Virus record (IMG/VR): IMGVR_UViG_3300017991_000048
Location: 1 to 64,000 of that record
Strand: one strand, 5' to 3'
Length of the DNA: 64,000 nt
Shown: positions 1,873 to 48,610 of the stretch, one piece after another
Layout of the letters: the number at the start of each line of letters is the position of its first letter
How positions within the stretch are numbered: the stretch's first letter is position 1
The notes under the pieces: model-generated
Database searches by the model: none
What the model saw: the letters and a program-made list of their open reading frames with translations, nothing else
What the model was told of the DNA's origin: nothing
Translations under genes and position numbers: made by a program

Positions 1873-2448
1873 TTATTCCTCGTCCTTCTCTTGTAAATGA
1901 CGCCAGAGATCCCGTTCCGACCCCTTAGGGACCGCTGTCGCAAGCTCAATAATTCCTAAAATCTTCAGCACAACATCTTCTGGCAAGTCCCTGGCTTGTA
2001 TATTGATCTTACCTATGCACTCTTCGCTAACACTAAGCGCAACCCCCTCCGGTATTCGGTCTTTCCGTTTCCAATGTTCAATAGTGTTCTCGGCTGATTG
2101 TATCAGTTGTCGTTTTCGCTCTTCTTCACGACGCATGGCTGTTTCAATATCAACAGACTCGCGGATATGAACAATGACACGTTCGAGTAAAAAGCCGCCG
2201 CCTTTTGTTTCCCTGAAACTTTTATGTTGAGTATTAGAAGATCTTACCACCAGAGTGTGCCGATCACTGCCACCCACGGGCCGAAAAAAAAGGACAACTC
2301 GATCGCGGCCCACATCCAATTGACATTCAACATATGAGCTTTGCGGTTCTTCTCCAACATTTGTCCGAGCACTACACACTCGACTGGTACGCCTCTCGAC
2401 TCCTTTGTAAACATCACCTATGAACTGCTGTATCTGTTTCAGTTCCAT
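1873..2448 (-). CDS. Hypothetical protein with C-terminal LWRHL tag
   Basis: 191-aa ORF ending RDLWRHLQEKDEE; KSFRETKGGGF segment resembles 47090..47502. Confidence 0.75.
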   Translation of the reverse strand: MELKQIQQFIGDVYKGVERRTSRVCSARTNVGEEPQSSYVECQLDVGRDRVVLFFRPVGGSDRHTLVVRSSNTQHKSFRETKGGGFLLERVIVHIRESVDIETAMRREEERKRQLIQSAENTIEHWKRKDRIPEGVALSVSEECIGKINIQARDLPEDVVLKILGIIELATAVPKGSERDLWRHLQEKDEE

Positions 2449-3232: not shown

Positions 3233-3910
3233 TTACCGCCAAGCACGACGGCCCGATACTGCCCGTGATGCCTGTGCAGCCTTGAGCGCTCCCTCAAGAG
3301 CCGTTAAGTTCTTGAGAATTTCTTGGTACTCTTCCCCCTTGGCCACAGCATCTTTCACTCTTTGAGGGACCGGCTTGCCTTGGCTTATAGCCCAACTGAC
3401 GCTGTTTGTATGTGCCTTTATGAACGTCTTTGCCGCTACTACATTAATTGGTTGCCTGGACGCATCCATAACTGAAGGGACTTCTCTGTGCCACTGTTCT
3501 ATCATCCGAGTGGCAATGCCTTTTTTCCGATACCCGTCTCGCACCACAATCCATCTGGGTACTTGTTTATAGTTGCCGGGAATTATGTAAGAAGCGATAA
3601 TCCCGTCACCGTCATAAATAAGAACGCCTGCCCTCGTATCTCCTGTAAGAGGAATATGAGGGCACTCACCATGAATAGGTGCAATATCTTTTGCGACCGA
3701 AGTGTCTGATACCCCAAGCTGATAGGTATAAGGAGTGCCTTCAAGAGGGCGCTTCGGCCCCGCAAAAGGCTGTCTTGCCAACGGGCCATCCTGCCCTCTT
3801 GGTATAGGTCTAAAACAACCGAAGAGTTCATTCGGAGTCATTTCCCAACGATAAACAAGCGCCATTATCTCTCTCCTAATCTCTACGGTATAGCTTTTGC
3901 GCGTCTCCAC
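3233..3910 (-). CDS. GNAT-like acetyltransferase-fold protein (start may be 3865)
   Basis: VVRDGYRKKGIATRMI resembles the GNAT acetyl-CoA loop V.p.yRgkGia. Confidence 0.5.
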   Translation of the reverse strand: METRKSYTVEIRREIMALVYRWEMTPNELFGCFRPIPRGQDGPLARQPFAGPKRPLEGTPYTYQLGVSDTSVAKDIAPIHGECPHIPLTGDTRAGVLIYDGDGIIASYIIPGNYKQVPRWIVVRDGYRKKGIATRMIEQWHREVPSVMDASRQPINVVAAKTFIKAHTNSVSWAISQGKPVPQRVKDAVAKGEEYQEILKNLTALEGALKAAQASRAVSGRRAWR

Positions 3911-5652
3911 TTCTTGATCGAAGCATTGTTAGGCATATCAGTTACCCAAGTACCTACCCCGTCCGAAATCAACCTGACAACTTGTGGAGCGCCTGATGCA
4001 GCACCCAATAACATGGACTCTCCTGGTGGTCCGGACGGTGTAACCGAATCAGATCCAGCCGGGTGAGCTACAAACCCAAATCCCGAAAATGGAGTTGTGC
4101 TACTCATCTTATTTTTCTTACCAAAATAACTAACGAACGTAATTTCTTTTCCCGCGCTTTCAGGTGTAATCTCTGGCATTGTCAAACAAACAAATGCGTT
4201 AGTTGCGTTGGGGTTTTGCATATAAAAAGAACGCCCCATTACCATATCATAAAAGTTAACATCGATACGAATAGGCCCAAACCCGTCGATGTCCTGTGTG
4301 TTTGCCAAGACCCATATCTGCGGGTCGGTTCCTACAAGCACACTGGTGGACACTGGCGCGGCTAAAATAAAAGCGCGATCCTTGTAAATACTGCCTGCTG
4401 TCGCTTTATAAGAAATACCCCCACTGACGGCTATCCCGTCATGGAATAAATTATCTGGACTTCCACGGAGCCACGCACCGCCAGTATTAACCTCCCAAGG
4501 GCCATTTTCTATGGGATCGGTTTGCCCAATGAGCAAAATATACTGGCCGTTGCCTAATACAACGCCGTCTGCTGTCACCGGTCCGGTTAGACTGACATTA
4601 TCCGTGGCTACAGCCTGAACAGAGCCAGACCAGAAAGTAACGCCGCCAGCCCAAACAGTGACCCAATTCTGAGGGTCTGTATCAACCGTTATAGGAATAC
4701 CAGACAAGTTCCAGAACGCCCACCGATTCACTGCTGGCGTAGCCACGCCCACCGGAAGCCCTAAAACTGTCAGAGAGGTGCTGGCAAGTGTATCAAGTTG
4801 AGATCCATCTCCGGTCGTATCTGATTCTAACTTAAGTAAGTCGCCAACATCCAACGATGGAGTGATCCCTGTAGTTTGAGCTAGAATCTGAGCCACGACA
4901 TCATTTTCGTCAGTGGGAGCCGCAAAAGTCACGGTTTGTGTGCCGCCACCGTCTACCTTTAGATTGAGGTCTAAACCATCCAAGTCACCGCCGCCACCGT
5001 AAACAAGACCCGTAAGATCAACTTGACCGATTATTGTAGCCGCCAAATCTTCAGTCGCCTCAACAATAGCGTCCTGAATTTCAGCCCCAGTGTCAGCGTC
5101 CGTGGCACGGGGCCACGCTCCCGCTTGAGCCACATAAATACCATTGGCTACTTGATCCTCAACACCCGGATCTTCCAAACACGCCCGAAGAATTCTATCC
5201 CCGTTCTGTACATCATAGCCCTCTTTAACGCCCAGATCCTCTAAGGTTGTAGCAGGATTAGTAAGAACCTTTTTGACATCAGCTAGAGTTGGAGCAGTAT
5301 CAGTCACATCGTAAATATCACCCGGAGTGCCGCCCCTCCATCTTACGGTGATATTGTGGTGGACGTGCCCACCGCTTGTGATCTGCGTCACATCCCCCAC
5401 ATTATTTATGGAGAACAGCTCGCTCTTTGTGTCAACAGTTTTCGCGTAGTTTTTAACCGAACCCGCCACTGGTGCTGGATCACTCGGCTGCACATCATAT
5501 TGAACAGGCGCTCCCGCATTTGTGGCAGAAGTTACAACCCTGTTGTGATCCATGAGAGAAGGATTGCCGTTCTCATCCACAAAAAACGCGGTATGCATCT
5601 CAGTAGGGGTTGGAACACTCTCAGCAGGTTTCTTTTTTAATGTTATCGCCAT
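3883..5652 (-). CDS. Fibre-like virion structural protein
   Basis: 589 aa, Gly/Thr/Val/Asp rich; two NG(I/P)(Y/W).V..GAW.R fibre-type repeats; N-terminal module shared with 10767, 11333, 12727. Confidence 0.7.
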   Translation of the reverse strand: MAITLKKKPAESVPTPTEMHTAFFVDENGNPSLMDHNRVVTSATNAGAPVQYDVQPSDPAPVAGSVKNYAKTVDTKSELFSINNVGDVTQITSGGHVHHNITVRWRGGTPGDIYDVTDTAPTLADVKKVLTNPATTLEDLGVKEGYDVQNGDRILRACLEDPGVEDQVANGIYVAQAGAWPRATDADTGAEIQDAIVEATEDLAATIIGQVDLTGLVYGGGGDLDGLDLNLKVDGGGTQTVTFAAPTDENDVVAQILAQTTGITPSLDVGDLLKLESDTTGDGSQLDTLASTSLTVLGLPVGVATPAVNRWAFWNLSGIPITVDTDPQNWVTVWAGGVTFWSGSVQAVATDNVSLTGPVTADGVVLGNGQYILLIGQTDPIENGPWEVNTGGAWLRGSPDNLFHDGIAVSGGISYKATAGSIYKDRAFILAAPVSTSVLVGTDPQIWVLANTQDIDGFGPIRIDVNFYDMVMGRSFYMQNPNATNAFVCLTMPEITPESAGKEITFVSYFGKKNKMSSTTPFSGFGFVAHPAGSDSVTPSGPPGESMLLGAASGAPQVVRLISDGVGTWVTDMPNNASIKKWRRAKAIP

Positions 5653-5752: not shown

Positions 5753-6754
5753 TCAAAACATTCTTTCTGTCCAGGTCCGGGGAGTGCGCTCGTTCTGTAT
5801 TTCCACTTCCAAGTGGTAAACAAATTTTTTAGTGCCGCACCCCCGAATATAATCAACAATGGACTGGAACCCCTCCCTTAGCTGCACAGTGGTCTTATAT
5901 CCCAATCTGTCACGAGCCTTTTCAGCCGAACAGGTGGCTTCCTTTACCTCCATCGGGCGATCAGGAACATAAATAGGGTCTAAATCAAAGCCCACAATAT
6001 CGGCCAAAATCCTTGCCAACTCGTTAATAGTGATGAAATCCTCATCTGGACCGACATTAAAAACCTCGCCACTCAACCCCTTATCAAACCCTAAACGTTC
6101 CATAGGTGCCGTTACATCGTTCACAAAAGAGAAACACCTCTTTTGCTCTCCATTTCCGTAAATAATTGGCTGACGGCCCTGAAGCATTAGATTTGCCATA
6201 ATACTGGCGACATTTCTGTACGGGTCGTCATATTTCTGTCTGGGGCCGACTATATTATGGGGTACTGCGATTACGTACTCCATCCCATGCGTCTCACAAA
6301 GATTGCGTAACATTTGTTCAGCAGCCACTTTGCCAATTGCGTAAGGATCTTGAGGCTTTGGGATCATGTCTTCTTCAAAAGGGACTTGATTTGCCCCGTA
6401 CCGAGCCATACTTGAACAATATACAAACCTCTTGACGTTGTTCCTGATCGCCGCTGTGATCATGGATACAGATGCTTGAACTATGTTCCTAGTAACCAGT
6501 GTAGGACTGAAAACACTCAACCCTTCATAGGCGGTTGCTGCGCAGTGGTAGACCACATCGACCCCCTTGAGGTCATAGGTCATCGCCATCAGATTTGCGC
6601 AGTCGTCACGATGAAACTCCACCCCCTTGGGTACATTCAATGGATCGCCGCCAATAAGATTGTCGCACCCTACCACTTGGTGCCCTCGTTCCAGCAAACA
6701 ATCAGCAAGGTGGCTACCTAAAAATCCAGCAATGCCTGATATAAAAACCTTCAT
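5753..6754 (-). CDS. NAD-dependent nucleotide-sugar epimerase/dehydratase (extended SDR)
   Basis: VFISGIAGFLGSHL Rossmann motif, YAIGK catalytic YxxxK, NIVGP, G.GEQKRCFSFVND. Confidence 0.92.
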   Translation of the reverse strand: MKVFISGIAGFLGSHLADCLLERGHQVVGCDNLIGGDPLNVPKGVEFHRDDCANLMAMTYDLKGVDVVYHCAATAYEGLSVFSPTLVTRNIVQASVSMITAAIRNNVKRFVYCSSMARYGANQVPFEEDMIPKPQDPYAIGKVAAEQMLRNLCETHGMEYVIAVPHNIVGPRQKYDDPYRNVASIMANLMLQGRQPIIYGNGEQKRCFSFVNDVTAPMERLGFDKGLSGEVFNVGPDEDFITINELARILADIVGFDLDPIYVPDRPMEVKEATCSAEKARDRLGYKTTVQLREGFQSIVDYIRGCGTKKFVYHLEVEIQNERTPRTWTERMF

Positions 6755-6769
6755 CGTCTCACCATTTCG

Positions 6770-7342
6770 CTACCCAGAAACATCCACCTTCTTTTCCAAC
6801 CGAATGGCATAATCTGCAAAATGTTTATTGGACAAAGCTATCATAGGCCCTGCACCGGCTTGAATTACTTCAATAACAGCCCTGCACACTCCCGTTTTCC
6901 ACCCCTCTACACCGGGTGATAGGAACGGCTTGACAGCAAAGTCATGCCCCGCAATCACACCCCCTATCTTCACTGCCTTGATCGCTAACTGTAGATGCCG
7001 CGAAACATTTTCGTAATCATGGTGAGCATCTACATATGCAAAATCAAAGTAGCTATCACCAAATGTAGGTAAAATCTCTTCCACCCTTCCTTCGTGCAGC
7101 CTTGTCGTGCCCCGGCTTATGTGTTTTGCCAAACGCTTTTTAGTCTCTCTCTTATATTTCCTCCATATTTTAGGATCACCTGAATGCCCCTCCCACAAAT
7201 CAATCAGATGGAATTCACGTGGCGTGGCGGCACCCAGAATAAGTTGCGCGTTTTCACCACCCATCACTCCCACTTCACACCCAACAGCGTTCTTAGGTAA
7301 GCATTCATAGAACGCTGAACGGCTAGGGTACTCTTTTATCAT
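6770..7342 (-). CDS. Class I SAM-dependent methyltransferase (Methyltransf_24-like)
   Basis: EVGVMGG motif I, DFAYVDAHHDYENV, GGVIAGHDF. Confidence 0.85.
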   Translation of the reverse strand: MIKEYPSRSAFYECLPKNAVGCEVGVMGGENAQLILGAATPREFHLIDLWEGHSGDPKIWRKYKRETKKRLAKHISRGTTRLHEGRVEEILPTFGDSYFDFAYVDAHHDYENVSRHLQLAIKAVKIGGVIAGHDFAVKPFLSPGVEGWKTGVCRAVIEVIQAGAGPMIALSNKHFADYAIRLEKKVDVSG

Positions 7343-8217
7343 TACATGCCCAGAACGGCATGTTTTGCCATCTCAATAGATTTCAGCTCTGCCGCATCTA
7401 GCCAGTCCATGTCTACCTTGGCCTGACGTTTATGGCAATGTGGGCATACTTGCTTTCGCCTGGACCTTTGCTTCCCCTCGTATCGAGCGCCACAGTTCCC
7501 GCAGATAAACGGTGCAGCAATCATATATAAGTTCATAGGTGTTCCCTTGTATAAGGCCGCGCTCTCCTCAAACTCGAAAGTATAACCAGGAAAGCCTTCG
7601 GCAGCATACCGGTGCTTGGGTATGTTATCCCAATCAGGTTTACTAAAAAGCCGGTCACTCTTTATCCAAAAGAATGTTCCTGGGTAATGCCATGTGGCCC
7701 GTGGACAACCCGCTGGCGATCCTCCAGTTCGATAGCAGCCTACACACGCATAGGTCTGCAACAGTTTATCAATCTTGTCTGGGTTCTTCAGACACTTGTC
7801 ATACATGGTGTCTCGCCACTGTCTTATAGCGTACCTCTCCAAAGGGTCACTTCGGCTAACACCCTTGCTGTGAGCAAAAAAGAAGGCTTCATCCGGGCTT
7901 GTTGACTCCAGAAGCCTTAAATTCTCATCGAACTCTGAAGCCTCTCTCAGCCCTGGAAATGGATCATTTTTGCGCTCGACAAACTGTACGCCCTCCAGTT
8001 CAGAAAACCAAGGCATGGCTTCATCCGGTGAGTAAACATTCTCCCCCACACGAAGTATAATAATCTTTCTTCCATTGAAAGCCTGCTTATAATGTATGAT
8101 CTTTCTTACGTTCAGGTAGGTCTCCACCGCGCCAGCAGCCCTGGCTTTGAACTTTTCACCCCATGCTGGTGCGGTATCTTTCAACGCACAACAGTCAAAC
8201 AGCAAATGCCTAATCAT
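7342..8217 (-). CDS. Putative glycan-modifying/glycosyltransferase-like protein with C-terminal Zn ribbon
   Basis: FFAHSKG and WHYPGTFFW motifs typical of proteins in phage glycosylation loci; CxxC...CxxC tail; neighbourhood. Confidence 0.5.
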   Translation of the reverse strand: MIRHLLFDCCALKDTAPAWGEKFKARAAGAVETYLNVRKIIHYKQAFNGRKIIILRVGENVYSPDEAMPWFSELEGVQFVERKNDPFPGLREASEFDENLRLLESTSPDEAFFFAHSKGVSRSDPLERYAIRQWRDTMYDKCLKNPDKIDKLLQTYACVGCYRTGGSPAGCPRATWHYPGTFFWIKSDRLFSKPDWDNIPKHRYAAEGFPGYTFEFEESAALYKGTPMNLYMIAAPFICGNCGARYEGKQRSRRKQVCPHCHKRQAKVDMDWLDAAELKSIEMAKHAVLGM

Positions 8218-9161
8218 AGTCCCTCCTGTATGGCATCGCGACAATGAGCAATCATCGTTTCTATATGCCTGTCTAACCGCAGTTTATCCTTTTGCCACTC
8301 AGAAGCAATCTTCTCCTGGTCTCCAAATAGCCCAGACAACGCCCTGCCAGAATCAAGATCACGGCACCACACCCTCGATAACATATCGCGATCAGAAAGA
8401 AATCCCTTCATCTTACGGTCTGACGGGAAAACCAGAAATGGCTTTTGTGCTCTATAGGTAAACAATGTAGCATGGAGAGAGCTAGATACAGTCCCAACTA
8501 CTTGTGGGTGTTCAATCAATGCAATCAAATCTCGCGGGTTATCGCTACTAACGACAGGCCACCCAAGATACTCTGATAGCGCCTTCACATATTGGGGTTC
8601 AAAAGACGTGAAGTTTACACATACCTTCTTGATGTCTGGAGTCGCACGATCAATCGCATGAGCCATGCGACGAAACTGCACCGCCTGTCTCCTGTTATAC
8701 ATATCCTGATGGAAGACATGAATTAACAAAATCTTCCCACCCGGCAGATCGGGCACAGTAGCCTGTCCAGGTTTCAAACACAACGACACACAAGGTACGA
8801 CTTCAACATCTGGCCGCGCTTCACGGATTATATCCGCGTCCCACTTAGACCGCACAGTAACATAACGATAATCCCGTAAAAATCCAAGATCACCTGGACT
8901 AGAGTTACACCCACAACCGTTCAGAATATTTCTACCGCTCTGCCGAAAGACTCTATATAACGGAAAGTCTTTTCGTATTAACTGACCACCGCCCACTATA
9001 ATTGTCGATGTCTCTACCTTAGCCACTTCCTCAACTGAATTCGGAAGCACCACATACGGCAGCTTCGCCTCTTCAAGTATTTGAACTAAAGCTAGCCCTA
9101 TGGCCCTATCGCCAAAGTTGGAAGTTGTATTGTCAAAAAGAATCCCGACAGGCTTGATCAT
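8214..9161 (-). CDS. Polysaccharide pyruvyl-transferase-like protein
   Basis: NFGD, IIVGGG, YVTVRS..D, SSSLHA motifs. Confidence 0.75.
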   Translation of the reverse strand: MIKPVGILFDNTTSNFGDRAIGLALVQILEEAKLPYVVLPNSVEEVAKVETSTIIVGGGQLIRKDFPLYRVFRQSGRNILNGCGCNSSPGDLGFLRDYRYVTVRSKWDADIIREARPDVEVVPCVSLCLKPGQATVPDLPGGKILLIHVFHQDMYNRRQAVQFRRMAHAIDRATPDIKKVCVNFTSFEPQYVKALSEYLGWPVVSSDNPRDLIALIEHPQVVGTVSSSLHATLFTYRAQKPFLVFPSDRKMKGFLSDRDMLSRVWCRDLDSGRALSGLFGDQEKIASEWQKDKLRLDRHIETMIAHCRDAIQEGL

Positions 9162-9177
9162 TACCCCCTCGCAAGGA

Positions 9178-10020
9178 CTACCGGGATCTAAATGTGGACT
9201 CAGTACGTATTATCTCAGTATAGTCGCCAATGACGCCTGCTGCACTAAAAGTCTTGGGGGAACTAGCGCCGTCTGAACTCCAGGTTGTCCCTGAAAACAA
9301 TCCATTCTTCGCTTTGACGGACCAGACATAATCCAGCGCGGTCAGACCGGGAAGCGTAGGAACCAGCGGGATATCCTTCGACATTTCGATTTGCTGTCGC
9401 CACATGAATATCTCCTCCTCAGTCATTGGATCTTCATGCCACGCCATGCCTACAAGCCAGTCCGACGTCGGAAGATCGCTTGAACCAGAGCTTGGCTGGA
9501 AGAAGTGGAAGTTCTGAGGAACAACCTCATTATCAAGAGTGATAGAGTCCACCGTAGGCTCTTTCTTGTGTCTGCGGCCATTGATATAAAAACCACCCTC
9601 AATATAATCGTCATCAGAGAGTACTATGGCCGTAAACTGAATCCCGGCATTGATCTGACTCCAATGTGACGTGCCATACTCGTTATTAATGTCGAACCCC
9701 TCTGCGTTCCAGGCCCCATCAGAGCTATTATTCTGAACCTCGAAGCTCATCTGACCAGTGACTTGAAGGTCCTCAGAACTCCCGCCTTGTCTATATAACT
9801 TATAATATGGCGAAGTATCCTCACACTCAAACAAATACTCATTCTTACCGGTTGGAGGGTGCCAAATTCCCTGCTTCCTTACCAGATGAACAATGAAGAT
9901 GGTCATCGCGGGTGCTCCGAACCGCAAAAACGAATCGTTTGATGCAAAATTAACATCCGTCCAGCTAAGGCCGTCTAACGGCTTAAGGATGTGCCACTTA
10001 TTATCTCTAGGTGCGACCAT
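9178..10020 (-). CDS. Putative structural protein, possibly lectin/LamG-like beta sandwich
   Basis: Beta-rich 280-aa ORF inside the structural cluster; fold guess only. Confidence 0.45.
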   Translation of the reverse strand: MVAPRDNKWHILKPLDGLSWTDVNFASNDSFLRFGAPAMTIFIVHLVRKQGIWHPPTGKNEYLFECEDTSPYYKLYRQGGSSEDLQVTGQMSFEVQNNSSDGAWNAEGFDINNEYGTSHWSQINAGIQFTAIVLSDDDYIEGGFYINGRRHKKEPTVDSITLDNEVVPQNFHFFQPSSGSSDLPTSDWLVGMAWHEDPMTEEEIFMWRQQIEMSKDIPLVPTLPGLTALDYVWSVKAKNGLFSGTTWSSDGASSPKTFSAAGVIGDYTEIIRTESTFRSR

Positions 10021-10023
10021 CGT

Positions 10024-10767
10024 CTAACTCCTCTGTACGAATGCTTCGATACTCCAATCGATTGTTGCAACTTCATTCGGAACCGCTCTGATAACGAAGT
10101 CCGTGCCAGATACCACTGCATCGATACTCCAGATCAGACTCTCACTTTCCTGCGGACCGTTTAGTATTAGCAGATCATGCACCCGTTCTGCATTTGTGTC
10201 ATCTCTGCTGAATAGTGCCGAAAACACCCAAGTCTTATACTTCAACACAGTGCTATCGGTCGCAACGATAGTCCCCCAAATTACGTATGCTCCGTTGTCA
10301 GTGCCGGGATCAAAAGTGCCGAGATTCGCTGCCGTATCCGAGCTGGTCTGAATATCGGCATCAATATCAAACCCGCCACCGCCGCCACCGGGGATTGTTA
10401 CGACCGTTTTTCCGCCAGCATCCGCTGCTGTAACACCGGCTCCTACGAAGTTTAGATCGTCCCTTTGGGTTAATGGGGTGCCCTCATCTTCAATTGTATG
10501 ACCGCTTCCTGCTGGCCCGGTTGGACCAATAGGCCCGGTTGGACCAATAGGCCCGGTTGCCCCAAAACCGCCTGTTGGTCCAGTGGCTCCGGGTCCGCCT
10601 GTTGGCCCTGTCGGTCCTGGGGGTCCCGGTGGTCCGCCTGGGCCTGTAGCGCCGGTATGATCCAGAAGCTCTGGCTGGCCGCTCTCGTTGATATAAAACA
10701 CCACATACATATCCGAAGGCGGCGGCGGCACCGCCCCAGAAGGTCGTCTTCTTAATGCTATAGTCAT
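10024..10767 (-). CDS. Collagen-like (Gly-X-Y) fibre protein
   Basis: About 16 GXY triplets ([14 protein letters not shown]...), EDEG..NFVG.GVT module shared with 11375..12727; start MTIALRRR. Confidence 0.8.
10501..10650 (-). repeat. Collagen-encoding 9/18-nt tandem repeats
   Basis: ggcccggttggaccaata-type repeats on the + strand. Confidence 0.85.
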
Positions 10768-10769
10768 CT

Positions 10770-11333
10770 TTAACCTACCTGCATCCAGTTTGCTCCATCT
10801 GAACGGAGTTTGACCCACTCATAATCGGTGTTCATCACATGGCTCGCTGCCCCGTCTATCGTTTCGCCACCGAATGTGTTTATCGTGCAATTGTTGGTTG
10901 CCGCTGTAGTCAACTTGACCCAAATCTCACGGTTTGTTCCGCCAACTGCTGTAGGCAGAGTTACCGTGGCAACACCGCCTGAAACATCGACTCTGATAAG
11001 CTCCCCAAGAGCAGCGGCGATAGCTCCGGTCTGAACGGCTGTCTGAAGTACAGGCGTTCCACCTAATAAACCCGGAGCCTTCCAAGTAGCTGCCACAGCC
11101 GAGTCCGCTGTTAAAACGCCGCCTGCAACCGGAGGGGCTGATGCTGAAACATCAACTGGCGCTCCCGTGGTAGCCAGTTCGTCTGCTGTTCCAACCCCAG
11201 ATGGCCGCACAACACCGGCATCATCTTTGGTTTTCAGAATGTCATCAGCAAGATCAACAAACAGACTCAACTGGTCTGTCGCTGGTAACACCACACTAGC
11301 GGCACTCTGTTTCTTTAACGTAATCTGACCCAT
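10770..11333 (-). CDS. Fibre/appendage structural protein
   Basis: Ala/Thr/Val rich; C-terminal TIDG...[11 protein letters not shown] module; shared N-terminal module. Confidence 0.7.
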
Positions 11334-11374: not shown

Positions 11375-12727
11375 TTATCCGTGTTCAACGGCTTTACCTG
11401 ACACCCGCCAATCAATGCTTTCTGCGGCGTCTCCAGTAACCTGAATATCAATAATCGGACCGCCACCAGGAATATCAAACGTGACGTCCCAAGCAGCGGC
11501 TCCCGCATCCTTATAAGGACCGTTTACAAAATTAACATCTTTGTTAGTCACGGTTGTGGCCCCCGCACCCCTACGGAAAGCCGCCGCAACTTTGAACAAC
11601 GCCACGTCTGACGTATCGTTAGATTGAGCCTCTATCAGAAAGTCAAGGGCTACAATTCGATTGTCAGCCAGAGTGGAGTAAGAATATAATGTGGTAGGTG
11701 TGGCATCTGCGGTACTAATATTGGCATCGATATATGTGGTCCCTGGATACGCCAGTTCCAAAGCAGTCGTAATATCGTAACCATCGTAAGGAGTGACATC
11801 TACAATATCCCCATCAACGATCAGAGTGCCGTCCACGATCAACGGCTCCACATACGGCATCCGGTCATTCTCTTGAACGACCCGCCTGGACCGTGGCGGG
11901 ATATAAGCTATTGAGAAGTTGTCTTCGGTCCTTACCGCTGTAGCATTGCCGTCGATAAAGAGGTTACCGCCATCCCCCACGACAACATTGTTCTCAAACA
12001 ACATGTCCTGTTTTTCAGGGACTGTCTGATCATCAGTAACTTCAGCTAGACTGTAGCCGCCACCGCCCTCGACCTCTACTTGAGTCTTACCTCCTGTATC
12101 AGTGACAGTGACGCCATCCCCCACGAAATTCATGGTGGCTCTTTGGGTTACCGGTACGCCTTCATCCTCAACCAAAGTGTAGCCGCCACCGCCAATGGCC
12201 TCAAAAGTCAGGGCTGTGGTGTTAAGGGTTATTGGAGCCGCTGTAGCCAAAATGAAAATCTGCTTGCCGTTCGCAGTTCCTTCTGGCCCTGTGGTAGTAA
12301 TACAACCGGGATTGACCTGATCTGACGCAGCAAAGTCTTCGCGCCGTTCCAGTATAAAAGGGTTAGCCCCGTCACCGAGTTGAGTGACAGTATAAATGCC
12401 GTTATCCTCGCCAGCCGCCCCGTTCTGTAGAAGAAGGTCATCAGTTAAGGCAGGAGCAACACCGTCAATAGAAGGCAGAGCACCGTTGGCGTTCGCCGTA
12501 ATAACATTATCTACCCGTGTGTAAGCTGGCAGAACCGCATCAGTGGCGAACCGAACAGCGTCATGGTAATCTTCTGGCCCTGAGGCCACCGGATAAATAA
12601 CGCCAAGGTGGTCTTTCCACTTTAAAGCTCCGTCCGCAACGTCCCGAAATAACCGAGCTTTTCCAGCCCCAGTCGCTACCGGAATAGCAGAAGCAAGCTC
12701 ACCTGTAAGTTGGATGTTAGACGCCAT
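11375..12727 (-). CDS. Fibre-like structural protein
   Basis: DAVRFAT...IDGV...LLQN....NGIY fibre repeat; EDEG..NFVGDGVT module. Confidence 0.7.
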   Translation of the reverse strand: MASNIQLTGELASAIPVATGAGKARLFRDVADGALKWKDHLGVIYPVASGPEDYHDAVRFATDAVLPAYTRVDNVITANANGALPSIDGVAPALTDDLLLQNGAAGEDNGIYTVTQLGDGANPFILERREDFAASDQVNPGCITTTGPEGTANGKQIFILATAAPITLNTTALTFEAIGGGGYTLVEDEGVPVTQRATMNFVGDGVTVTDTGGKTQVEVEGGGGYSLAEVTDDQTVPEKQDMLFENNVVVGDGGNLFIDGNATAVRTEDNFSIAYIPPRSRRVVQENDRMPYVEPLIVDGTLIVDGDIVDVTPYDGYDITTALELAYPGTTYIDANISTADATPTTLYSYSTLADNRIVALDFLIEAQSNDTSDVALFKVAAAFRRGAGATTVTNKDVNFVNGPYKDAGAAAWDVTFDIPGGGPIIDIQVTGDAAESIDWRVSGKAVEHG

Positions 12728-12730
12728 CTC

Positions 12731-13318
12731 CTAAATCTCCAGCACAATTAATTCGCCAATCGAATCCAACGTTCCCTCAACATTCACGCCACCAACAACA
12801 ATCATTTGCTGGTACTGAGGGATGGTTACGGTGGTTCCGCTTGGGACGGTTTCGTAACTAAAGTTGTCAAGACCTCCGCCACCCCCTCCCGAACGGATAA
12901 GAGGATTTAACTTTGTGGCCCACCCATAATCCGTGTTCCCCTCACGAGTTTCTAAGACAAACCCAACACGAGTGCTGAAGGCGGTAAGCGAAAAAGTACC
13001 AAAGGACGTTTCTAGCGGCCCTCCGGTGCCTGTGACAGTGCTTTTGAAGCCTACAGCCCTGCCCGTGCTCGCGGGAAACACAAACGTAACAACGGTTGTG
13101 GGGGTCAGAACTAGATGGGTAATGGGATTGACATCGGTGAGGGCGGGAGTTGTAGACAACTCATCTGTTCCCAAGACCTCCAAATACCACTCCACAACGC
13201 TAGAAGCGTCCTGTAGCTTGATGCTGATCGTATTGCCTGGGCCTACGTCTACGCCGTCCGTTGTGGGTACAAACGGTCCAACTCCGTCTTGAATCAAGCA
13301 GATAGGAGAAAGTGGCAT
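12731..13318 (-). CDS. Putative structural protein
   Basis: First gene of minus-strand structural cluster; C-terminal TVTIPQYQQMIV.G.L module resembles middle of 11375..12727. Confidence 0.6.
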   Translation of the reverse strand: MPLSPICLIQDGVGPFVPTTDGVDVGPGNTISIKLQDASSVVEWYLEVLGTDELSTTPALTDVNPITHLVLTPTTVVTFVFPASTGRAVGFKSTVTGTGGPLETSFGTFSLTAFSTRVGFVLETREGNTDYGWATKLNPLIRSGGGGGGLDNFSYETVPSGTTVTIPQYQQMIVVGGVNVEGTLDSIGELIVLEI

Positions 13319-14526: not shown

Positions 14527-14880
14527 ATGCTAGGAGAATTCAAAAGTGTGCTCCCTGATTTGTCTGTTTATCCTTCTACCAAAGAAGGAGTTGAACACCT
14601 CATACAAGATTTAACCCCTGCAATTACCAATTTGTGGAAGACTGAGCGCAAAGATTCAGACGATTTGGTAGCAGTGATCGACGCTCATACCAATAATATA
14701 TCCCTGAAATCTAGAAAAGCTGTCTACGTGCAATTAAAAAGACACAACCCTGAGATAGATTTGCTCAAACGACTTCAAAAGCCTGCCTCAAAAGCAAACG
14801 GAACTGTAAAAATCTGGACAATTGTTGGGTTTTCAAACGGAAAAGTTTGCGCTCTTCCGATGGTTTTAGCTCGCAGCTAA
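14527..14880 (+). CDS. Hypothetical protein
   Basis: 117-aa ORF co-oriented with 14126. Confidence 0.6.
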   Translation: MLGEFKSVLPDLSVYPSTKEGVEHLIQDLTPAITNLWKTERKDSDDLVAVIDAHTNNISLKSRKAVYVQLKRHNPEIDLLKRLQKPASKANGTVKIWTIVGFSNGKVCALPMVLARS

Positions 14881-15447
14881 AGCAGCACTAGAGTGGTCCC
14901 TGATCAAGTCAAAGTACTGCTCGCGGCCTTTACACAAAATGATACAAGGCTCGACGCCAACCAATAACGAATGGTTGATCGTAAGCACCCGGCCAACCTT
15001 TCCGTTATAGAGATCATAAGGATGGATATTTTCAAATTTACAATGAAGCTCCCAAACTTCGAAAACTCTCTGCTCCAATTCAGTGTTCTTTTGAAGACGT
15101 AACATATTTACTACTCTTTGAACCGAACGGTTCCACTCCCACATAAAATAAGGGACGTCAGCAACCGGCAATAAATGATTAAGGCCGATCTTTTTTTCCC
15201 TCCTCCGAAGTTTCCCGGCTAATAAATGATCTCGGAGTAGTAGCCTATGTACAGAATGAGGTAAAGCGAAGCGGCTTTCTGACGCCATTTTGATCGCGTA
15301 CATTACAGCTTCTCTGTGTCCGTCGTAAACTAACTCCCCTGGCTCACTCAGACCGGGCTGCGGATCAATCTTGTTAGACTCTGTTACAAATTCATGGACC
15401 CACTCCGCAGACAAGCCAGCCTGATAAAGCAACTCAGTTTCTTCCAT
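14866..15447 (-). CDS. Fic/Doc-family protein with degenerate motif
   Basis: FVTESNKID and HCKFENIHPYDLYNGKVGR versus canonical HPFx(D/E)GNGRxxR. Confidence 0.75.
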   Translation of the reverse strand: MEETELLYQAGLSAEWVHEFVTESNKIDPQPGLSEPGELVYDGHREAVMYAIKMASESRFALPHSVHRLLLRDHLLAGKLRRREKKIGLNHLLPVADVPYFMWEWNRSVQRVVNMLRLQKNTELEQRVFEVWELHCKFENIHPYDLYNGKVGRVLTINHSLLVGVEPCIILCKGREQYFDLIRDHSSAALAAS

Positions 15448-17690: not shown

Positions 17691-19187
17691 ATGAGTAAGA
17701 ACTATCTACCCACCTTCGACGTTTCCAAGAAAGGTCTGGCGAACATACTGGCCAGGAGGGGCGTCGAGTTCATCGTTCTGGAACTGATTCAGAACGCCTT
17801 GGACGAAAACTCATCCAGGGTCGAAGTTGAGTTCATCCCCGTTCCTAATAAAAGAGGACTGTACCGATTGACCGTCGAAGACGACAACCCAGAAGGCTTC
17901 AAAAACATAGCCAACGTCTATACACTGTTTGGAGAATCCCCCAAGGCTTCCGATCCAACCAAGGCTGGACGTTATATGATGGGTGAGAAACTCGTTATTG
18001 CAAACTGCCAAGAGGCATCGGTTCTGACCACCACCGGGCATGTGCTGTTCAATGAAAAGGGCAGGCGTCATGGTCGGAAACGCCGAGACTTCGGATCAAT
18101 CTTCACCGGGACTTTGCGAATGACAAAGGCTCAGGCCGAATGTATCAGGGCTGCGGTAAGTACCGTTATCGTCCGTGAAGATGCCAAGCTGATATTCAAT
18201 GGCATCCAAATGCCATACTGGGAACCTGAGACAACGTTCCAGGGTACATTGACAACCGAAAAGGCTGACGAAGAGGGACGCATTCGCCGCACCAGACGCA
18301 AGACCAACATAGAGGTCTACAATGTTCAGGACGGTGACACCCCCATGCTTTACGAAATAGGACTACCGGTTGTCGAGATTGACTGCCCTTACCATATTAA
18401 TGTCTGCCAGCGAGTGCCTCTCAATGTTGAGAGAGACAATGTTACCCCGGCTTACATGCGTGAGATTCTAACACTTGTCCTGAACGAAATACACCAGGAG
18501 CTTGACGAAGAGGATGCCAAAGCACCCTGGATTGATGAAGCCCTGGAGTCTGGCAACGTAACCAACGAAGCTCTTGGAGATGTGATTACGGCTCGTTATG
18601 GTGACAAGGTTGTCTTGCAAGACCCCAAGGACCGGGAAGCTGAAAAGATTGCCGTATCCAAAGGCTACACAGTTATGCCCAACTCAATGCCGTCTGCCAC
18701 GCGGAAAGCGATAAAAACGTCTGGCCACGTGCTCCCGGCAGGACAAGTGACACCTAGCCCCAAGGCGTGGTCTGACGACCCAAATGCAAGCCCTGCTGAC
18801 TATATTCCTTACGAAAAGTGGTCGCCGGGTATGAAGCGGGTTGCCGTTTATGCGACACGGCTTGCTCGACTGCTGATGGATGTGACCCTGAATGTTTCTT
18901 ATGTCAGGGTGCCCAACAATTTCCAAGCCTGTTATGGAAGAGGCACCCACACAGGTGACCTCACATTCAACCTCCGCTATCAGAAAAAGGCGTGGTTTGA
19001 TGAGGCTTACGATAATATCGAGGAACTGGACAGCCTGCTCATTCACGAGTTCGGGCATCATTACAGCAGCGACCACCTGAGCGGCAGGTATCACAACGCC
19101 CTGTGTGACCTTGGAGCCAAGCTCAAAAAGCTGGCACTGGCCGGTAAGCTCAGGGAGCCGACCAAGAAACTTCAAGTACGGTCGTAG
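17691..19187 (+). CDS. GHKL ATPase fused to C-terminal HExxH metallopeptidase-like segment
   Basis: ELIQNALDE, VEDDNPEGF, AGRYMMGEK; LLIHEFGHH near C-terminus. Confidence 0.78.
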   Translation: MSKNYLPTFDVSKKGLANILARRGVEFIVLELIQNALDENSSRVEVEFIPVPNKRGLYRLTVEDDNPEGFKNIANVYTLFGESPKASDPTKAGRYMMGEKLVIANCQEASVLTTTGHVLFNEKGRRHGRKRRDFGSIFTGTLRMTKAQAECIRAAVSTVIVREDAKLIFNGIQMPYWEPETTFQGTLTTEKADEEGRIRRTRRKTNIEVYNVQDGDTPMLYEIGLPVVEIDCPYHINVCQRVPLNVERDNVTPAYMREILTLVLNEIHQELDEEDAKAPWIDEALESGNVTNEALGDVITARYGDKVVLQDPKDREAEKIAVSKGYTVMPNSMPSATRKAIKTSGHVLPAGQVTPSPKAWSDDPNASPADYIPYEKWSPGMKRVAVYATRLARLLMDVTLNVSYVRVPNNFQACYGRGTHTGDLTFNLRYQKKAWFDEAYDNIEELDSLLIHEFGHHYSSDHLSGRYHNALCDLGAKLKKLALAGKLREPTKKLQVRS

Positions 19188-21726: not shown

Positions 21727-22092
21727 TTATGTCCTTTCCCGGCCACTGTCAATTCCTTCTACAGCCTCTGCAAGCCCTTCGTCCTCTATGTAAAAGAGGT
21801 TAGGTGCCGCATTACTGATTAACTGGCCCAGACGGTAATGAGGGTTTGCTGCCCAAACCTTGTAAAGACGCTCAATTACAACTCTTTTCTCCGCTGCTGT
21901 CTGTGCTCGCCCCTCCATTTTCTTACCTCTCGTGTTATCAACTTTCCATTGGCGTTCGATCTTTCGCTTAGCTTCTTCGCCTTGAACCAAATATAAAAGC
22001 CGCCAAGTGAGGGGCGTCTTACTGTCGTTTAAAAAGCCCCAATGAAATTTCTTAGACCTGCGTTGGAGTTTCGGCCACTTGATCATCTTCAT
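21727..22092 (-). CDS. Hypothetical protein
   Basis: C-half VIERL.KVW...PHYRLGQLISNA...FYIEDE common phage pattern. Confidence 0.6.
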   Translation of the reverse strand: MKMIKWPKLQRRSKKFHWGFLNDSKTPLTWRLLYLVQGEEAKRKIERQWKVDNTRGKKMEGRAQTAAEKRVVIERLYKVWAANPHYRLGQLISNAAPNLFYIEDEGLAEAVEGIDSGRERT

Positions 22093-22342
22093 CTGCTTTC
22101 TTTATCCAACCGGAAACCCTCTTATCTCCCATTCCAGCGATTAATAATAATCGAAGACACTGACCGCTAAACCCTTCTCGTATGGCAAATATGTAAAAAT
22201 CGTCCTCTGGCACGTCCTTGATAATCACATTAAACCGATCCGGATGTAGGTAATCGGACGCATCCTCGAATACTGCTTCGGGCCATTTATCCTTGATCAG
22301 CCCACGCAACGCATAATCTCCGTAAACAAGTTCTTCAACCAT
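22052..22342 (-). CDS. Hypothetical protein
   Basis: 96-aa ORF in operon. Confidence 0.65.
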   Translation of the reverse strand: MVEELVYGDYALRGLIKDKWPEAVFEDASDYLHPDRFNVIIKDVPEDDFYIFAIREGFSGQCLRLLLIAGMGDKRVSGWIKKADEDDQVAETPTQV

Positions 22343-22568
22343 CGTCTTCCTCTATGTGCTCCCATAGAGTTTTACTGGGGCCTTCGAGTTCATCAGGTAA
22401 AGGCGGCACAAACTGTGCTCCAGGTTCAGTAGCAACTATCCTGTGAACAGTTCCGTCCCAACTCTTTGCTGACAGGACACCTTCTTCGTCTACAAAAATA
22501 GTAACACGCCCCATATCTGGAGTTCGAACACTGGCGGCACTGGTCTTTTTCATAGTCAAAGACGACAT
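22335..22568 (-). CDS. Stand-alone fibre N-terminal module with LWEHI tag
   Basis: MSSLTMKKTSAASVRTP...IFVDEEG matches N-termini of 5652/10767/11333; ends TLWEHIEEDDG. Confidence 0.75.
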   Translation of the reverse strand: MSSLTMKKTSAASVRTPDMGRVTIFVDEEGVLSAKSWDGTVHRIVATEPGAQFVPPLPDELEGPSKTLWEHIEEDDG

Positions 22569-22870
22569 CAACCCTCTTCTTGAATGTAATCCCACAAAGT
22601 CATATTGTTCGGATCAGGTCCGGTCGGTTGCTCTCCAGGAGGTAGCGGTTCCTGTTCTTCCTCCTTTTTCTTAGAAAGCAGCCTGTATACATTGTTATAG
22701 TAGTCTTTGAAACAAGGAACACCCTCTTCATCTACAAAAAGGACTACTTGGCCAAACGCAGGGGCCTGTATCGCTGAGGCCCATTCCCCTCCCACAGTTA
22801 ACGTCTGGGTGTTTACCGCTCCTGTTGTTACAGAGTCCGGTGTTATTGGATTAAACTCAGTAGTCGGCAT
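22568..22870 (-). CDS. Stand-alone fibre N-terminal module with LWDYI tag
   Basis: ASAIQAP...LFVDEEG...KD; ends TLWDYIQEEG. Confidence 0.75.
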   Translation of the reverse strand: MPTTEFNPITPDSVTTGAVNTQTLTVGGEWASAIQAPAFGQVVLFVDEEGVPCFKDYYNNVYRLLSKKKEEEQEPLPPGEQPTGPDPNNMTLWDYIQEEG

Positions 22871-23017
22871 AAATACAACCTACACCAAAAGTAACCCCCA
22901 CACACTGACTAGGTGACTAAAGAAGCCAGCGCGTGGGGGTCGTGTGGCTAGAAAAAAGAAACGCTTGGGTTACAAAGCGCCTTTTTCAAATTACACTTTA
23001 CACCAAATAATTATTAG

Positions 23018-48577: not shown

Positions 48578-48610
48578 GGTGTAATACTTGATTATATCAA
48601 GTATTACACC
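48578..48610. promoter_or_regulatory. Perfect 33-bp palindrome (two GGTGTAATA boxes around an operator)
   Basis: GGTGTAATACTTGAT-TAT-ATCAAGTATTACACC between divergent genes. Confidence 0.8.

What the first reader, a model, noticed from the sequence alone, without database searches (positions are those of the whole stretch)
22335..22870. Free-standing copies of the fibre N-terminal module fused directly to the tag
Seen: structural genes 5652, 10767, 11333 and 12727 begin with a ~40-aa module (I.L.K..A.SV..P......LFVD..G....D..G). Two tandem mini-genes about 10 kb away consist only of this module, a Pro/Glu linker and LWEHI or LWDYI. Inference: they link the tag hub to virion appendage assembly, as chaperone, placeholder or dominant-negative decoy against a related phage. 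This is the best internal clue to what the tag does.
Basis: partly seen in the sequence, partly recalled or inferred. Interest (0 to 1): 0.65.

Follow-up and report, generated by a model that had tools for sequence, protein, structure and literature searches.

The report
Headless fibre stubs carrying the tag
Two small tandem genes of a 398-kb uncultured sediment phage each join the first ~45 residues of its fibre proteins, through a floppy linker, to the short peptide tag that ends about 50 of its other small proteins; the design recurs in related phages, so it is a real gene family that joins the fibre module and the tag in one protein, but what it does is still inferred.

Summary
On the minus strand, mini A (22568-22870, 100 aa) and mini B (22335-22568, 77 aa) each consist of the N-terminal module of the four fibre genes, a Pro/Glu-rich linker and the tag. 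A profile built from the four fibre N-termini alone ranks the two minis next in the whole genome (E 1e-5 and 2e-5; the following hit is 0.14). The design is conserved. One syntenic mini-gene lies in a 416-kb relative, and two more are in other metagenomes. A diverged second type lies at 387 kb. A close relative with almost no tags (G002) has module-bearing fibres but no mini-gene, so the minis follow the tag repertoire, not fibre assembly. The module is a widespread, nearly always N-terminal unit of phage fibre-like proteins. It resembles the end of a trimeric tailspike (PDB 7chu) and abuts a collagen helix in one fibre, so it is probably trimeric. The tag is a peptide-level motif modelled as a short helix. 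Best reading: a two-ended, probably trimeric connector or competitor between the fibre N-terminal interface and an unidentified tag receptor. The anatomy is firm; the mechanism is inferred (about 0.3). Chaperone and decoy readings are not supported.

The parts
22568..22870 (-). Mini A gene (100 aa). Residues 1-21 are an N-terminal extension (22808-22870), 22-65 the fibre module (22676-22807), 66-90 a Lys/Glu/Pro-rich linker (22601-22675) and 91-100 the tag TLWDYIQEEG (22571-22600). The stop is at 22568-22570.
   Evidence: ORF and translation. Module E=2.3e-5 with the fibre-only HMM and 1.1e-14 in the large search. The same 100-aa product is on record in the protein collection.
22335..22568 (-). 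Mini B gene (77 aa from the ATG at 22568; the ORF is open up to a GTG at 22595). Residues 1-45 are the module (22434-22568), 46-66 a Pro/Glu linker (22371-22433) and 67-77 the tag TLWEHIEEDDG (22338-22370).
   Evidence: The start overlaps the stop of A (TGATG) behind GAAGAGGG. The same 77-aa product was called independently in the public collection (P0008). In the AF2 model the module has pLDDT 88-96 with three strands, the linker has no secondary structure, and the tag forms a helix at 68-74.
22877..22886 (-). Promoter-like motif GGTGTAGGTT, with its first G 16 nt upstream of the ATG of mini A. Its form (TG + TAnnnT) and spacing would start transcription at or next to the start codon.
   Evidence: The motif TCGGTGTA is seen 14 times against 0.7 expected in upstream intergenic regions. 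Its modal distance to the start codon is 15-16 nt.
22959..22982 (-). Terminator-like hairpin plus T-run between the upstream DUF4406/DUF7768 gene and mini A, so mini A appears to open its own transcription unit.
   Evidence: A similar hairpin, T-run and GGTGTAG lie about 215 nt upstream of the mini-gene of G001.
22052..22342 (-). Untagged 96-aa gene ('EELVYG' protein). Its ATG overlaps the end of mini B. It follows the mini-gene directly in the L093 contig and one gene further on in G001.
   Evidence: AF2 pLDDT is 90.8, a small alpha/beta domain with no PDB fold match. The family also occurs in phage contigs without tags or minis.
11375..12727 (-). Fibre protein of 450 aa; the module is residues 1-48 (12584-12727).
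10770..11333 (-). Fibre-like protein of 187 aa; the module is residues 1-46 (11196-11333).
10024..10767 (-). Collagen-like fibre of 247 aa. The module is residues 1-45 (10633-10767), and Gly-X-Y repeats follow from about residue 39.
   Evidence: (Collagen, residues 39-87).
3883..5652 (-). Fibre protein of 589 aa; the module is residues 1-45 (5518-5652).
12731..13318 (-). 195-aa protein encoded just upstream of the 450-aa fibre (start and stop overlap). In relative G002 its first ~170 residues are fused directly to the fibre shaft, in place of its own tail plus the fibre's module. It is a candidate docking partner of the module.
   Evidence: BLASTP of the G002 768-aa protein against both G000 proteins. 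The same split arrangement occurs in L099.
1873..2448 (-). Conserved 191-aa protein inside the fibre gene cluster that ends in a tag variant (DLWRHLQEKDEE). It is a likely ancestral carrier of the tag.
   Evidence: Orthologues end in LLWDYLQD.. (G001), GLWDHLQEEEF (G002) and SRWDHLLEGPED (G004).

Best explanation
Mini A and mini B are real, expressed-looking genes for 'headless fibre stubs'. At one end is the small beta-meander that caps the N-terminus of the phage's fibres. At the other end is the clade's peptide tag, modelled as a short amphipathic helix. A 20-30-residue flexible Pro/Glu spacer joins them.

The module is probably trimeric, so each particle would show three tags. I infer that the protein works as a two-ended connector or competitor. 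The module end engages whatever fibre N-termini engage: each other in a trimer, or their socket on the virion. The tag end engages the still unidentified receptor that recognises about 50 other tagged proteins. The protein would thus couple the tag system physically to the fibre attachment interface.

Shown: the anatomy, the homology of the module, the peptide nature of the tag, and conservation and synteny in relatives that have many tags. Inferred: trimerisation, binding at either end, and the direction and purpose of the coupling.
For: 1. Module homology is significant within the genome and in 1.84 billion proteins. The AF2 model shows a confident module, an unstructured linker and a C-terminal helix at the tag.

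2. The tag is selected as a peptide. All synonymous Leu, Asp and His codons are used across the 50 copies. The residue before the tag is T, S, N or D (typical helix-capping residues) in 46 of 50.

3. The design recurs in G001 (syntenic, 78 aa), in L093 (a syntenic contig from another metagenome) and in L092 (P0093). A second type lies at genome 387 kb and at G001 93 kb. Across these, module and tag are conserved while the linker is not.

4. Only 7 of 46 tagged genes of this genome, the two minis among them, have a BLASTP homologue in G001, although G001 has 45 tagged ORFs of its own. The minis therefore belong to the stable core of the tagged set.

5. The tag-poor sister G002 and 10 further relatives lack the tag expansion. 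A mini-gene was sought in G002 and four of those relatives and not found, although G002 has module-bearing fibres.

6. Trimer compatibility: in the 247-aa fibre the module runs straight into a collagen repeat. Sequence (E 0.014) and fold (prob 0.99, rmsd 1.6 A over 47 columns) both point to the end of the trimeric tailspike 7chu. The nearest named Atlas clusters are 'phage tail like trimerisation region' (scores 0.88-0.89, a lead only).

7. Mini A has the GGTGTA promoter-like motif of the tagged gene arrays. That motif is nearly absent from the large structural region (3 of 153 genes).
Against: - No binding partner is shown for either end; the one complex prediction gave no answer.
- The tag receptor is unknown. 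Both candidates specific to tag-rich genomes that I examined also occur without tags.
- There are no expression or proteome data; no RNA run holds the region.
- The hairpin core also occurs as an internal repeat in long fibrous proteins. The module may therefore have been borrowed purely as an oligomerisation unit, with no link to fibre sockets.
- The promoter motif suggests expression with the tagged (probably early or middle) genes, which fits poorly with acting during late virion assembly.
Confidence: 0.3

Rival explanations
1. Trivalent tag decoy or regulator. The module was co-opted only as a compact trimerisation domain, in the way T4 foldon is used in the laboratory. The mini-protein is then a high-avidity ligand of the tag receptor that competes with, times or clusters the ~50 monovalent tagged clients, and has nothing to do with fibre sockets.
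For: The minis contain nothing but an oligomerisation-type unit, a spacer and the tag. The second type (387 kb) keeps only the hairpin core, twice, and has lost the N-terminal strand typical of fibre N-termini. The hairpin core is a repeat unit of long fibrous proteins. The minis follow the tag expansion, not the fibres. They share the promoter motif of the tagged arrays.
Against: Type I minis keep the whole module, including the N-terminal strand that is otherwise found only at fibre N-termini. Trimerisation is not shown. The receptor is unknown.
Confidence: 0.25
2. Ordinary tagged cargo. The tag gives all its carriers one common fate: loading into the virion for co-injection (as an encapsulin or T4 capsid-targeting peptide does), or timed degradation. 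The minis are simply clients whose payload happens to be a fibre module, for example a removable plug of fibre sockets.
For: The flexible linker plus terminal peptide matches the build of cargo-loading peptides. Tagged genes are small, numerous and turn over quickly between relatives, like effector sets. A conserved tagged protein lies in the fibre cluster.
Against: Tagged genes lie in arrays away from the structural genes and carry a motif that is rare there. Canonical tags also occur internally or near the N-terminus, which a terminal degron or loading peptide would not predict. No protease or shell partner is identified. Fibres assemble without minis in G002.
Confidence: 0.2
3. Dominant-negative decoy against co-infecting related phages, or a fibre assembly chaperone or placeholder.
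For: The free module is 32-40% identical to most of the fibre modules (14-27% to the most diverged ones), so it could compete for their socket or mix into their trimers.
Against: The module is just as close to the phage's own fibres, so a decoy would poison its own assembly. G002 and most of the 466 module-bearing representatives have no mini-gene. Neither idea explains why the tag is strictly conserved on the minis. No chaperone family matches.
Confidence: 0.1
4. Non-functional recombination leftovers: a fibre 5' end joined by chance to the 3' end of a tagged gene.
For: The genes are short, have no known domains, and lie near both fibre genes and tagged arrays.
Against: At least five diverged versions (33-49% identity) have intact frames, conserved module and tag, conserved position, translational coupling and their own promoter-like signal.
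Confidence: 0.05

Closest known systems
Tailspike or tail-fibre adaptor proteins of SP6/K1-5-like phages (short proteins with the T7 gp17-type N-terminal tail-attachment domain that dock other spikes). From my own knowledge, not tested here.
   Same: A short protein that keeps only the N-terminal fibre module and carries at its other end a site for a second partner. Several fibres in one phage share one N-terminal module.
   Different: There is no sequence or Pfam relation. Here the second site is an ~11-residue peptide motif shared with ~50 non-structural small proteins, not a folded docking domain. Virion association is not shown.
C-terminal end of the trimeric tailspike ORF18 of Geobacillus virus E2 (PDB 7chu), and Pfam PF26696 'phage tail like trimerisation region'
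   Same: The hairpin core matches 7chu residues 486-516 by profile (E 0.014). The AF2 model of mini B superposes on 7chu at rmsd 1.6 A over 47 columns (prob 0.99). Atlas clusters carrying PF26696 are the nearest named neighbours of both minis.
   Different: In 7chu the unit is C-terminal and part of a 519-residue enzyme. Both matches are below formal significance for their searches (E 0.014 and 0.22). PF26696 is not in the local Pfam library, so membership could not be tested.
Tethered short linear motifs that feed a hub: encapsulin cargo-loading peptides, the SSB C-terminal tip, the NWETF pentapeptide of chemoreceptors, T4 clamp-binding C-termini. From my own knowledge.
   Same: The build is the same: a folded part, a disordered Pro/Glu-rich linker, then a short conserved hydrophobic/acidic peptide at or near the C-terminus, shared by many unrelated proteins.
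   Different: The motif ([TSND]-L-W-[DE]-[HY]-[LIV] plus an acidic or polar tail) matches none of those consensus sequences. The receptor is unknown. 'LWDHL' does not occur in this sense in the searchable literature.
T4 fibritin foldon (a small beta-hairpin trimerisation unit at a fibre end). From my own knowledge.
   Same: A beta-hairpin unit of fewer than 50 residues at the end of trimeric fibres that could trimerise on its own.
   Different: No sequence relation was found. Trimerisation of this module is inferred, not shown.

Membership tests
Fibre N-terminal module of this phage clade | Significant profile similarity to the first ~45 residues of the fibre proteins | tested here: met
   The fibre-only HMM gives E 9.9e-6 (B) and 2.3e-5 (A), with the next ORF at 0.14. 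The 13-sequence profile against 1.84e9 proteins gives 1.8e-15 and 1.1e-14.
Fibre N-terminal module of this phage clade | The module sits at the extreme N-terminus | tested here: met
   Mini B, the G001 mini and P0093 have it at residues 1-45. In mini A and P0037 it follows 19-21 extra residues. Nearly all of the 150 best hits have it at residue 1-3.
Fibre N-terminal module of this phage clade | The module is followed by a fibre shaft or receptor-binding part | tested here: not met
   The minis end after the linker and tag (77-101 aa). This is what makes them 'free-standing'.
Pfam PF26696 PTL_trimer (phage tail like trimerisation region) | Score above the family's gathering threshold | not testable with these tools
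   The model is absent from the local Pfam copy. There are only Atlas feature-neighbour leads at 0.88-0.89.
Pfam PF26696 PTL_trimer (phage tail like trimerisation region) | Forms trimers | tested here: inconclusive
   Indirect evidence only: the module abuts a collagen repeat and resembles the end of the trimeric 7chu. The complex prediction gave no answer.
Tagged protein set of this phage | [TSND]-L-W-[DE]-[HY]-[LIV] within 20 residues of the C-terminus, followed by polar or acidic residues | tested here: met
   The ends are TLWDYIQEEG and TLWEHIEEDDG. They are 2 of the 50 terminal tags in the genome.
Tagged protein set of this phage | Conservation at peptide level, not DNA level | tested here: met
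   Six Leu codons at the first position, twelve codons at the last, and both GAT/GAC and CAT/CAC are used.
Tagged protein set of this phage | Binds the common tag receptor | not testable with these tools
   The receptor is unidentified. The GHKL-HExxH and EELVYG candidates were rejected on distribution.
Tail fibre adaptor (T7 gp17 N-terminal type) and tail fibre assembly chaperones | Match to the corresponding Pfam or PHROG families | tested here: not met
   Neither mini matched any family in Pfam (E<=0.1) or PHROGs (E<=0.01).
Encapsulin-type cargo-loading peptide | C-terminal peptide after a flexible linker | tested here: met
   The Pro/Glu-rich linker has no predicted structure and the tag forms a terminal helix. 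This is a resemblance in build only.
Encapsulin-type cargo-loading peptide | Binds the inside of an HK97-fold shell; carriers are found inside the particle | not testable with these tools
   There is no virion proteome and no complex model.

The most novel reading that the evidence does not exclude
The minis are the physical bridge of a lineage-specific tag system. About 50 fast-evolving small phage proteins share one helical peptide tag. The conserved, trimeric module-plus-tag stubs tie the tag's receptor to the fibre sockets of the virion. The phage could then carry a variable arsenal of tagged proteins on or in the particle to the next host, or regulate that arsenal by a trivalent competitor. 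This would be a phage counterpart of cargo-loading peptides, with a dedicated adaptor built from a fibre N-terminus.
Probability: 0.15. Interest if true: 0.85.

Novelty: new variant of a known kind. Interest (0 to 1): 0.6.

Why it matters
Peptide tags shared by dozens of unrelated proteins usually mark a hub: a loading, targeting, degradation or recruitment machine. I found no description of such a system in a phage; the motif gave nothing relevant in a full-text search. Most tagged proteins here are orphans that differ even between close relatives, so they say little about what the tag does. The minis are different: they are conserved, and they pair the tag with a module whose normal place is known, the N-terminal end of virion fibres. 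That makes them the smallest natural bait for finding the tag receptor, and a direct test of whether the system is tied to the virion. If the module trimerises on its own, it is also a compact natural trimerisation unit.

Tried and rejected
1. Tag as a DNA signal (promoter or terminator overlapping gene ends): rejected, because synonymous codons vary freely.

2. Complex prediction of 3 x the 195-aa protein with 3 x mini B: verdict 'no answer' (score 0.00, controls not run). This is no evidence either way.

3. The GHKL-ATPase + HExxH protein (17691-19187) as tag receptor or protease. It is present in G000, G001 and L093 and missing exactly at that place in G002. But the family has more than 780 members, and its next-closest contigs with DNA available (L096, L097) have no tags or module, so it is not tag-specific.

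4. The EELVYG protein (22052-22342) as tag receptor. It lies next to or near the mini-gene in three genomes. But homologues in L101-L104 sit in contexts with no tag and no mini, and it has no PDB fold match.

5. R2K ATP-grasp genes lie near the minis in L092 and L093, but none is present in this genome.

6. The Rosetta-stone lead (195-aa protein as module socket) is only a lead. L100 and G002 have module-bearing fibres without that protein's tail.

7. Close DNA relatives among named phages: none. The word search with mini A found only itself.

8. Reads: other sediment and seawater runs hold only short, identical contigs, so there is no variation for a selection test, and no RNA run was found.

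9. Literature searches for the motif, for tags in jumbo phages, and for PF26696 or 7chu gave nothing usable.

10. Only table 11 was used; nothing in the genome calls for another code.

Full report
**What the window is.** The window is the first 64 kb of a single 398,071-bp contig with direct terminal repeats. It is a jumbo phage with a large terminase, a GroEL-like chaperonin, ribonucleotide reductase and an NAD-ligase. No named phage is close at DNA level. By terminase, the nearest records are uncultured jumbo-phage contigs of 170-416 kb (63-83% identity) and, far off, an acidobacterial phage. Its DNA occurs in sediment and seawater metagenomes.

**The observation.** Two small ORFs lie in tandem on the minus strand.
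- Mini A is 22568-22870 (100 aa).
- Mini B is 22335-22595 as an ORF. Its ATG at 22568 overlaps the stop of A (TGATG) behind a purine-rich stretch, and the public gene call for the same product starts there (77 aa, P0008).
- The stop of B in turn overlaps the ATG of the next gene (22052-22342).
- Mini A is preceded by a terminator-like hairpin (22959-22982) and a GGTGTAGGTT motif 16 nt before its ATG.

Each protein has a ~45-residue segment like the N-termini of the four fibre genes (starts at 5652, 10767, 11333, 12727), then a Pro/Glu/Lys-rich stretch of 20-26 residues, then TLWEHIEEDDG or TLWDYIQEEG. Mini A has 21 extra residues in front.

**Is the module similarity real?** An HMM made only from the four fibre N-termini was run against every stop-to-stop ORF of at least 40 aa in the whole genome (4,899). 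After the four fibres it puts the two minis next (E 9.9e-6 and 2.3e-5), and the next ORF scores 0.14. Iterated over this genome and two relatives, it collects exactly 13 proteins: the fibres of the three phages plus the minis.

A 13-sequence profile was searched against 1.84 billion representatives. I used this search because the family scans and the word search had left the minis without any relative. It finds 466 proteins at E<=1e-3. In nearly all of the 150 listed, the module starts at residue 1-3, and the proteins range from 73 to 2,709 residues. A conserved N-terminal unit on fibre-like proteins with variable bodies is the usual signature of the end by which fibres are held.

The fibres here hit tail-fibre and head-decoration PHROGs, and one hits Collagen.

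**What the module looks like.** With a 115-row alignment, AF2 models mini B as follows:
- residues 1-45 confidently (pLDDT 88-96), with strands at 22-26, 32-36 and 41-43;
- residues 46-66 without secondary structure;
- a helix at 68-74, which is the tag.

The profile hits residues 486-516 of the trimeric tailspike ORF18 of Geobacillus virus E2 (7chu) at E 0.014. Foldseek independently ranks 7chu first (prob 0.99, rmsd 1.6 A, 47 columns, E 0.22). Both matches are short and below formal significance, but they agree.

The hairpin core also recurs 3-9 times inside fibrous proteins of 900-2,300 residues. In the 247-aa fibre the module runs straight into Gly-X-Y repeats, so three modules must sit together at the end of a triple helix. 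The nearest named ESM-Atlas clusters of both minis carry PF26696, 'phage tail like trimerisation region' (0.88-0.89, leads only). That model is not in the local Pfam copy. I therefore take the module as trimer-compatible, but its trimerisation is not shown.

**The tag.**
- Fifty ORFs of the genome (30 in the window) end in [TSND]-L-W-[DE]-[HY]-[LIV] followed by 1-16 polar or acidic residues. They are concentrated at 22-105 kb. The tripeptide WDH occurs in 38 ORF tails against 1.8 expected.
- Synonymous codons vary freely at every position, so selection acts on the peptide.
- The residue before the Leu is T, S, N or D (typical helix-capping residues) in 46 of 50, and many tags follow Pro/Glu-rich stretches.
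- The ten largest tagged proteins have no Pfam domain above threshold.
- The string does not occur in this sense in the searchable literature.
- A few proteins carry a canonical tag internally or near the N-terminus, so it behaves as a short linear motif rather than a strictly terminal signal.

**Relatives.**
- G001 (416 kb, terminase 83%) has 45 tagged ORFs. G002 (412 kb, complete, terminase 80%) has one canonical terminal tag, one variant (LWDCL) and one N-terminal tag. Ten further relatives have no LWDHL-coding site at all.
- Only 7 of 46 tagged genes of this genome, the two minis among them, have a BLASTP homologue in G001. The tagged set turns over quickly, and the minis belong to its small stable core.
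- G001 has one mini-gene (78 aa) at the syntenic place: DUF4406/DUF7768 gene, mini, a small zinc-ribbon gene, then the EELVYG gene.
- The big search found two more. P0037 lies on a 16.7-kb contig that is syntenic with 13.4-23.4 kb of the window and itself carries several tagged genes. P0093 lies on a 5-kb contig.
- P0093 also matches a 133-aa tagged protein at genome 387014-387415 (E 9e-9) and its G001 orthologue. These keep the hairpin core, a Pro-rich linker and the tag.
- In the seven-way alignment the module core and the tag are conserved and the linker is not.
- G002 has module-bearing fibres but no mini.

The minis therefore follow the tag expansion, not the fibres.

**Where the tag may come from.** A 191-aa protein inside the fibre gene cluster (1873-2448) ends in DLWRHLQEKDEE. 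Its orthologues end in tag-like sequences in G001, G002 and even G004 (terminase 71%). A 146-aa protein (genome 104 kb) is also tagged in all three close genomes. The motif is thus older than its expansion, and its receptor is probably a conserved protein.

**Searching for partners.**
- A GHKL-ATPase/HExxH protein (17691-19187) and the EELVYG protein (22052-22342) are both present in tag-rich genomes and absent from G002. Both families also occur widely without tags, so I reject them as dedicated receptors.
- In G002 the first ~170 residues of the 195-aa protein (12731-13318) are fused directly to the fibre shaft. Here that protein has its own tail, and the fibre starts with the module. This makes the 195-aa protein a candidate socket for the module. 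But L100 and G002 have other module-bearing fibres without that tail. The 3:3 complex prediction with mini B returned no answer and counts neither way.

**Expression class.** GGTGTA(A/G)nnnT sits 15-16 nt before many start codons. It reads like an extended -10 element placed for leaderless transcripts. It is found at 30 of 255 genes between 20 and 140 kb, including tagged arrays and mini A, but at only 3 of 153 genes in the 180-340 kb structural region. So the minis are probably expressed with the tagged genes rather than with the bulk of the structural genes. This is an inference from a motif only.

**Interpretation.** The anatomy (fold, spacer, motif) is that of a two-ended connector.
- Because fibres with this module exist without minis, an obligatory chaperone or placeholder role is unlikely.
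- Because the module is as close to the phage's own fibres as to any other, a decoy would poison the phage itself.
- The strict conservation of the tag on the minis says the tag end matters.

The remainder is unassigned.

**Novelty.** Fibre adaptors that keep only an N-terminal module, and hub-binding peptide tags, are both known kinds. A conserved mini-protein that fuses the two, inside a phage with about 50 tagged proteins, is to my knowledge undescribed.

Noticed in passing
Genome-wide, e.g. window 22877-22886 (-), 28619 (+), 51687 (+), 62153 (+); genome 81843, 103164, 152000, 379150: The motif GGTGTA(A/G)nnnT, often after a T-run, lies with its first G 15-16 nt before the start codon of dozens of genes. 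It reads like an extended -10 element placed for leaderless mRNAs. It is common at 20-180 and 340-380 kb and almost absent at 180-340 kb (3 of 153 genes). Only about a fifth of genes have an SD-like sequence.
   Followed up: partly
Window 27.6-63.7 kb and genome up to 105 kb; also 146555 and 387055: About 50 small, mostly orphan ORFs end in [TSND]LW[DE]H[LVI] plus a polar or acidic tail. Relative G001 has 45 such ORFs, but almost none are homologous to these. G002 and ten further relatives lack the expansion. A few proteins carry the motif internally or near the N-terminus (e.g. genome 133999-134442, residue 24; G002 177633-178064, residue 12).
   Followed up: partly
Genome 387014-387415 (-) = L017:9014-9415; G001 92998-93357: A third module-like + Pro-rich linker + tag protein (133 aa) with two hairpin cores. 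It is below threshold with the module HMM (E 0.14) but linked through P0093 (BLASTP E 9e-9).
   Followed up: yes
Genome 102536-103120 (-) and G001 233788-234408: A 194-206-aa protein that ends in a tag-like TLYDHLKE (Y in place of W). Its G001 orthologue contains a module-like hairpin (E 0.006). It lies back to back with the tagged gene 103180-103677.
   Followed up: no
Window 12731-13318 and 11375-12727; G002 114818-117124: Split versus fused fibre. G002 encodes one 768-aa protein in which the N-domain is joined directly to a triplicated shaft repeat. Here and in G001 and L099 the N-domain protein has its own Gly6 + ~45-aa tail, and the fibre begins with the module.
   Followed up: partly
Window 5753-10020 (-): A glycan-modifying island sits between the fibre genes: NAD-dependent epimerase/dehydratase, a methyltransferase, a polysaccharide pyruvyl transferase and two unknowns. 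It is not at this place in G001 or G002.
   Followed up: no
Window 17691-19187 (+): A 498-aa protein with a GHKL-ATPase N-box (ELIQNALDEN) and a C-terminal HEFGH zincin-like motif. It is missing exactly at this position in G002. It belongs to a family of more than 780 uncharacterised metagenomic proteins.
   Followed up: partly
Window 465-1793 (-), 2449-3201 (-), 3233-3910 (-), 14866-15447 (-): The fibre cluster is flanked by a second GHKL-like protein (phrog_6077), a calcineurin-like phosphoesterase, a weak GNAT match and a weak Fic/DOC match.
   Followed up: no
Window 48578-48610 (+): A perfect palindrome is built from the promoter-like motif: GGTGTAATACTTGAT TAT ATCAAGTATTACACC. Related TTGAT(T/A)ATATCAA elements follow several tagged genes (e.g. 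36.88, 37.18 and 48.25 kb).
   Followed up: no
L092:904-2076 and L093:3779-4585: R2K-clade ATP-grasp genes (Pfam R2K_3/R2K_2) lie within 0.5-2 kb of the mini-genes in the two metagenomic contigs. None is present in this genome; G002 has a homologue at 168.9 kb.
   Followed up: partly
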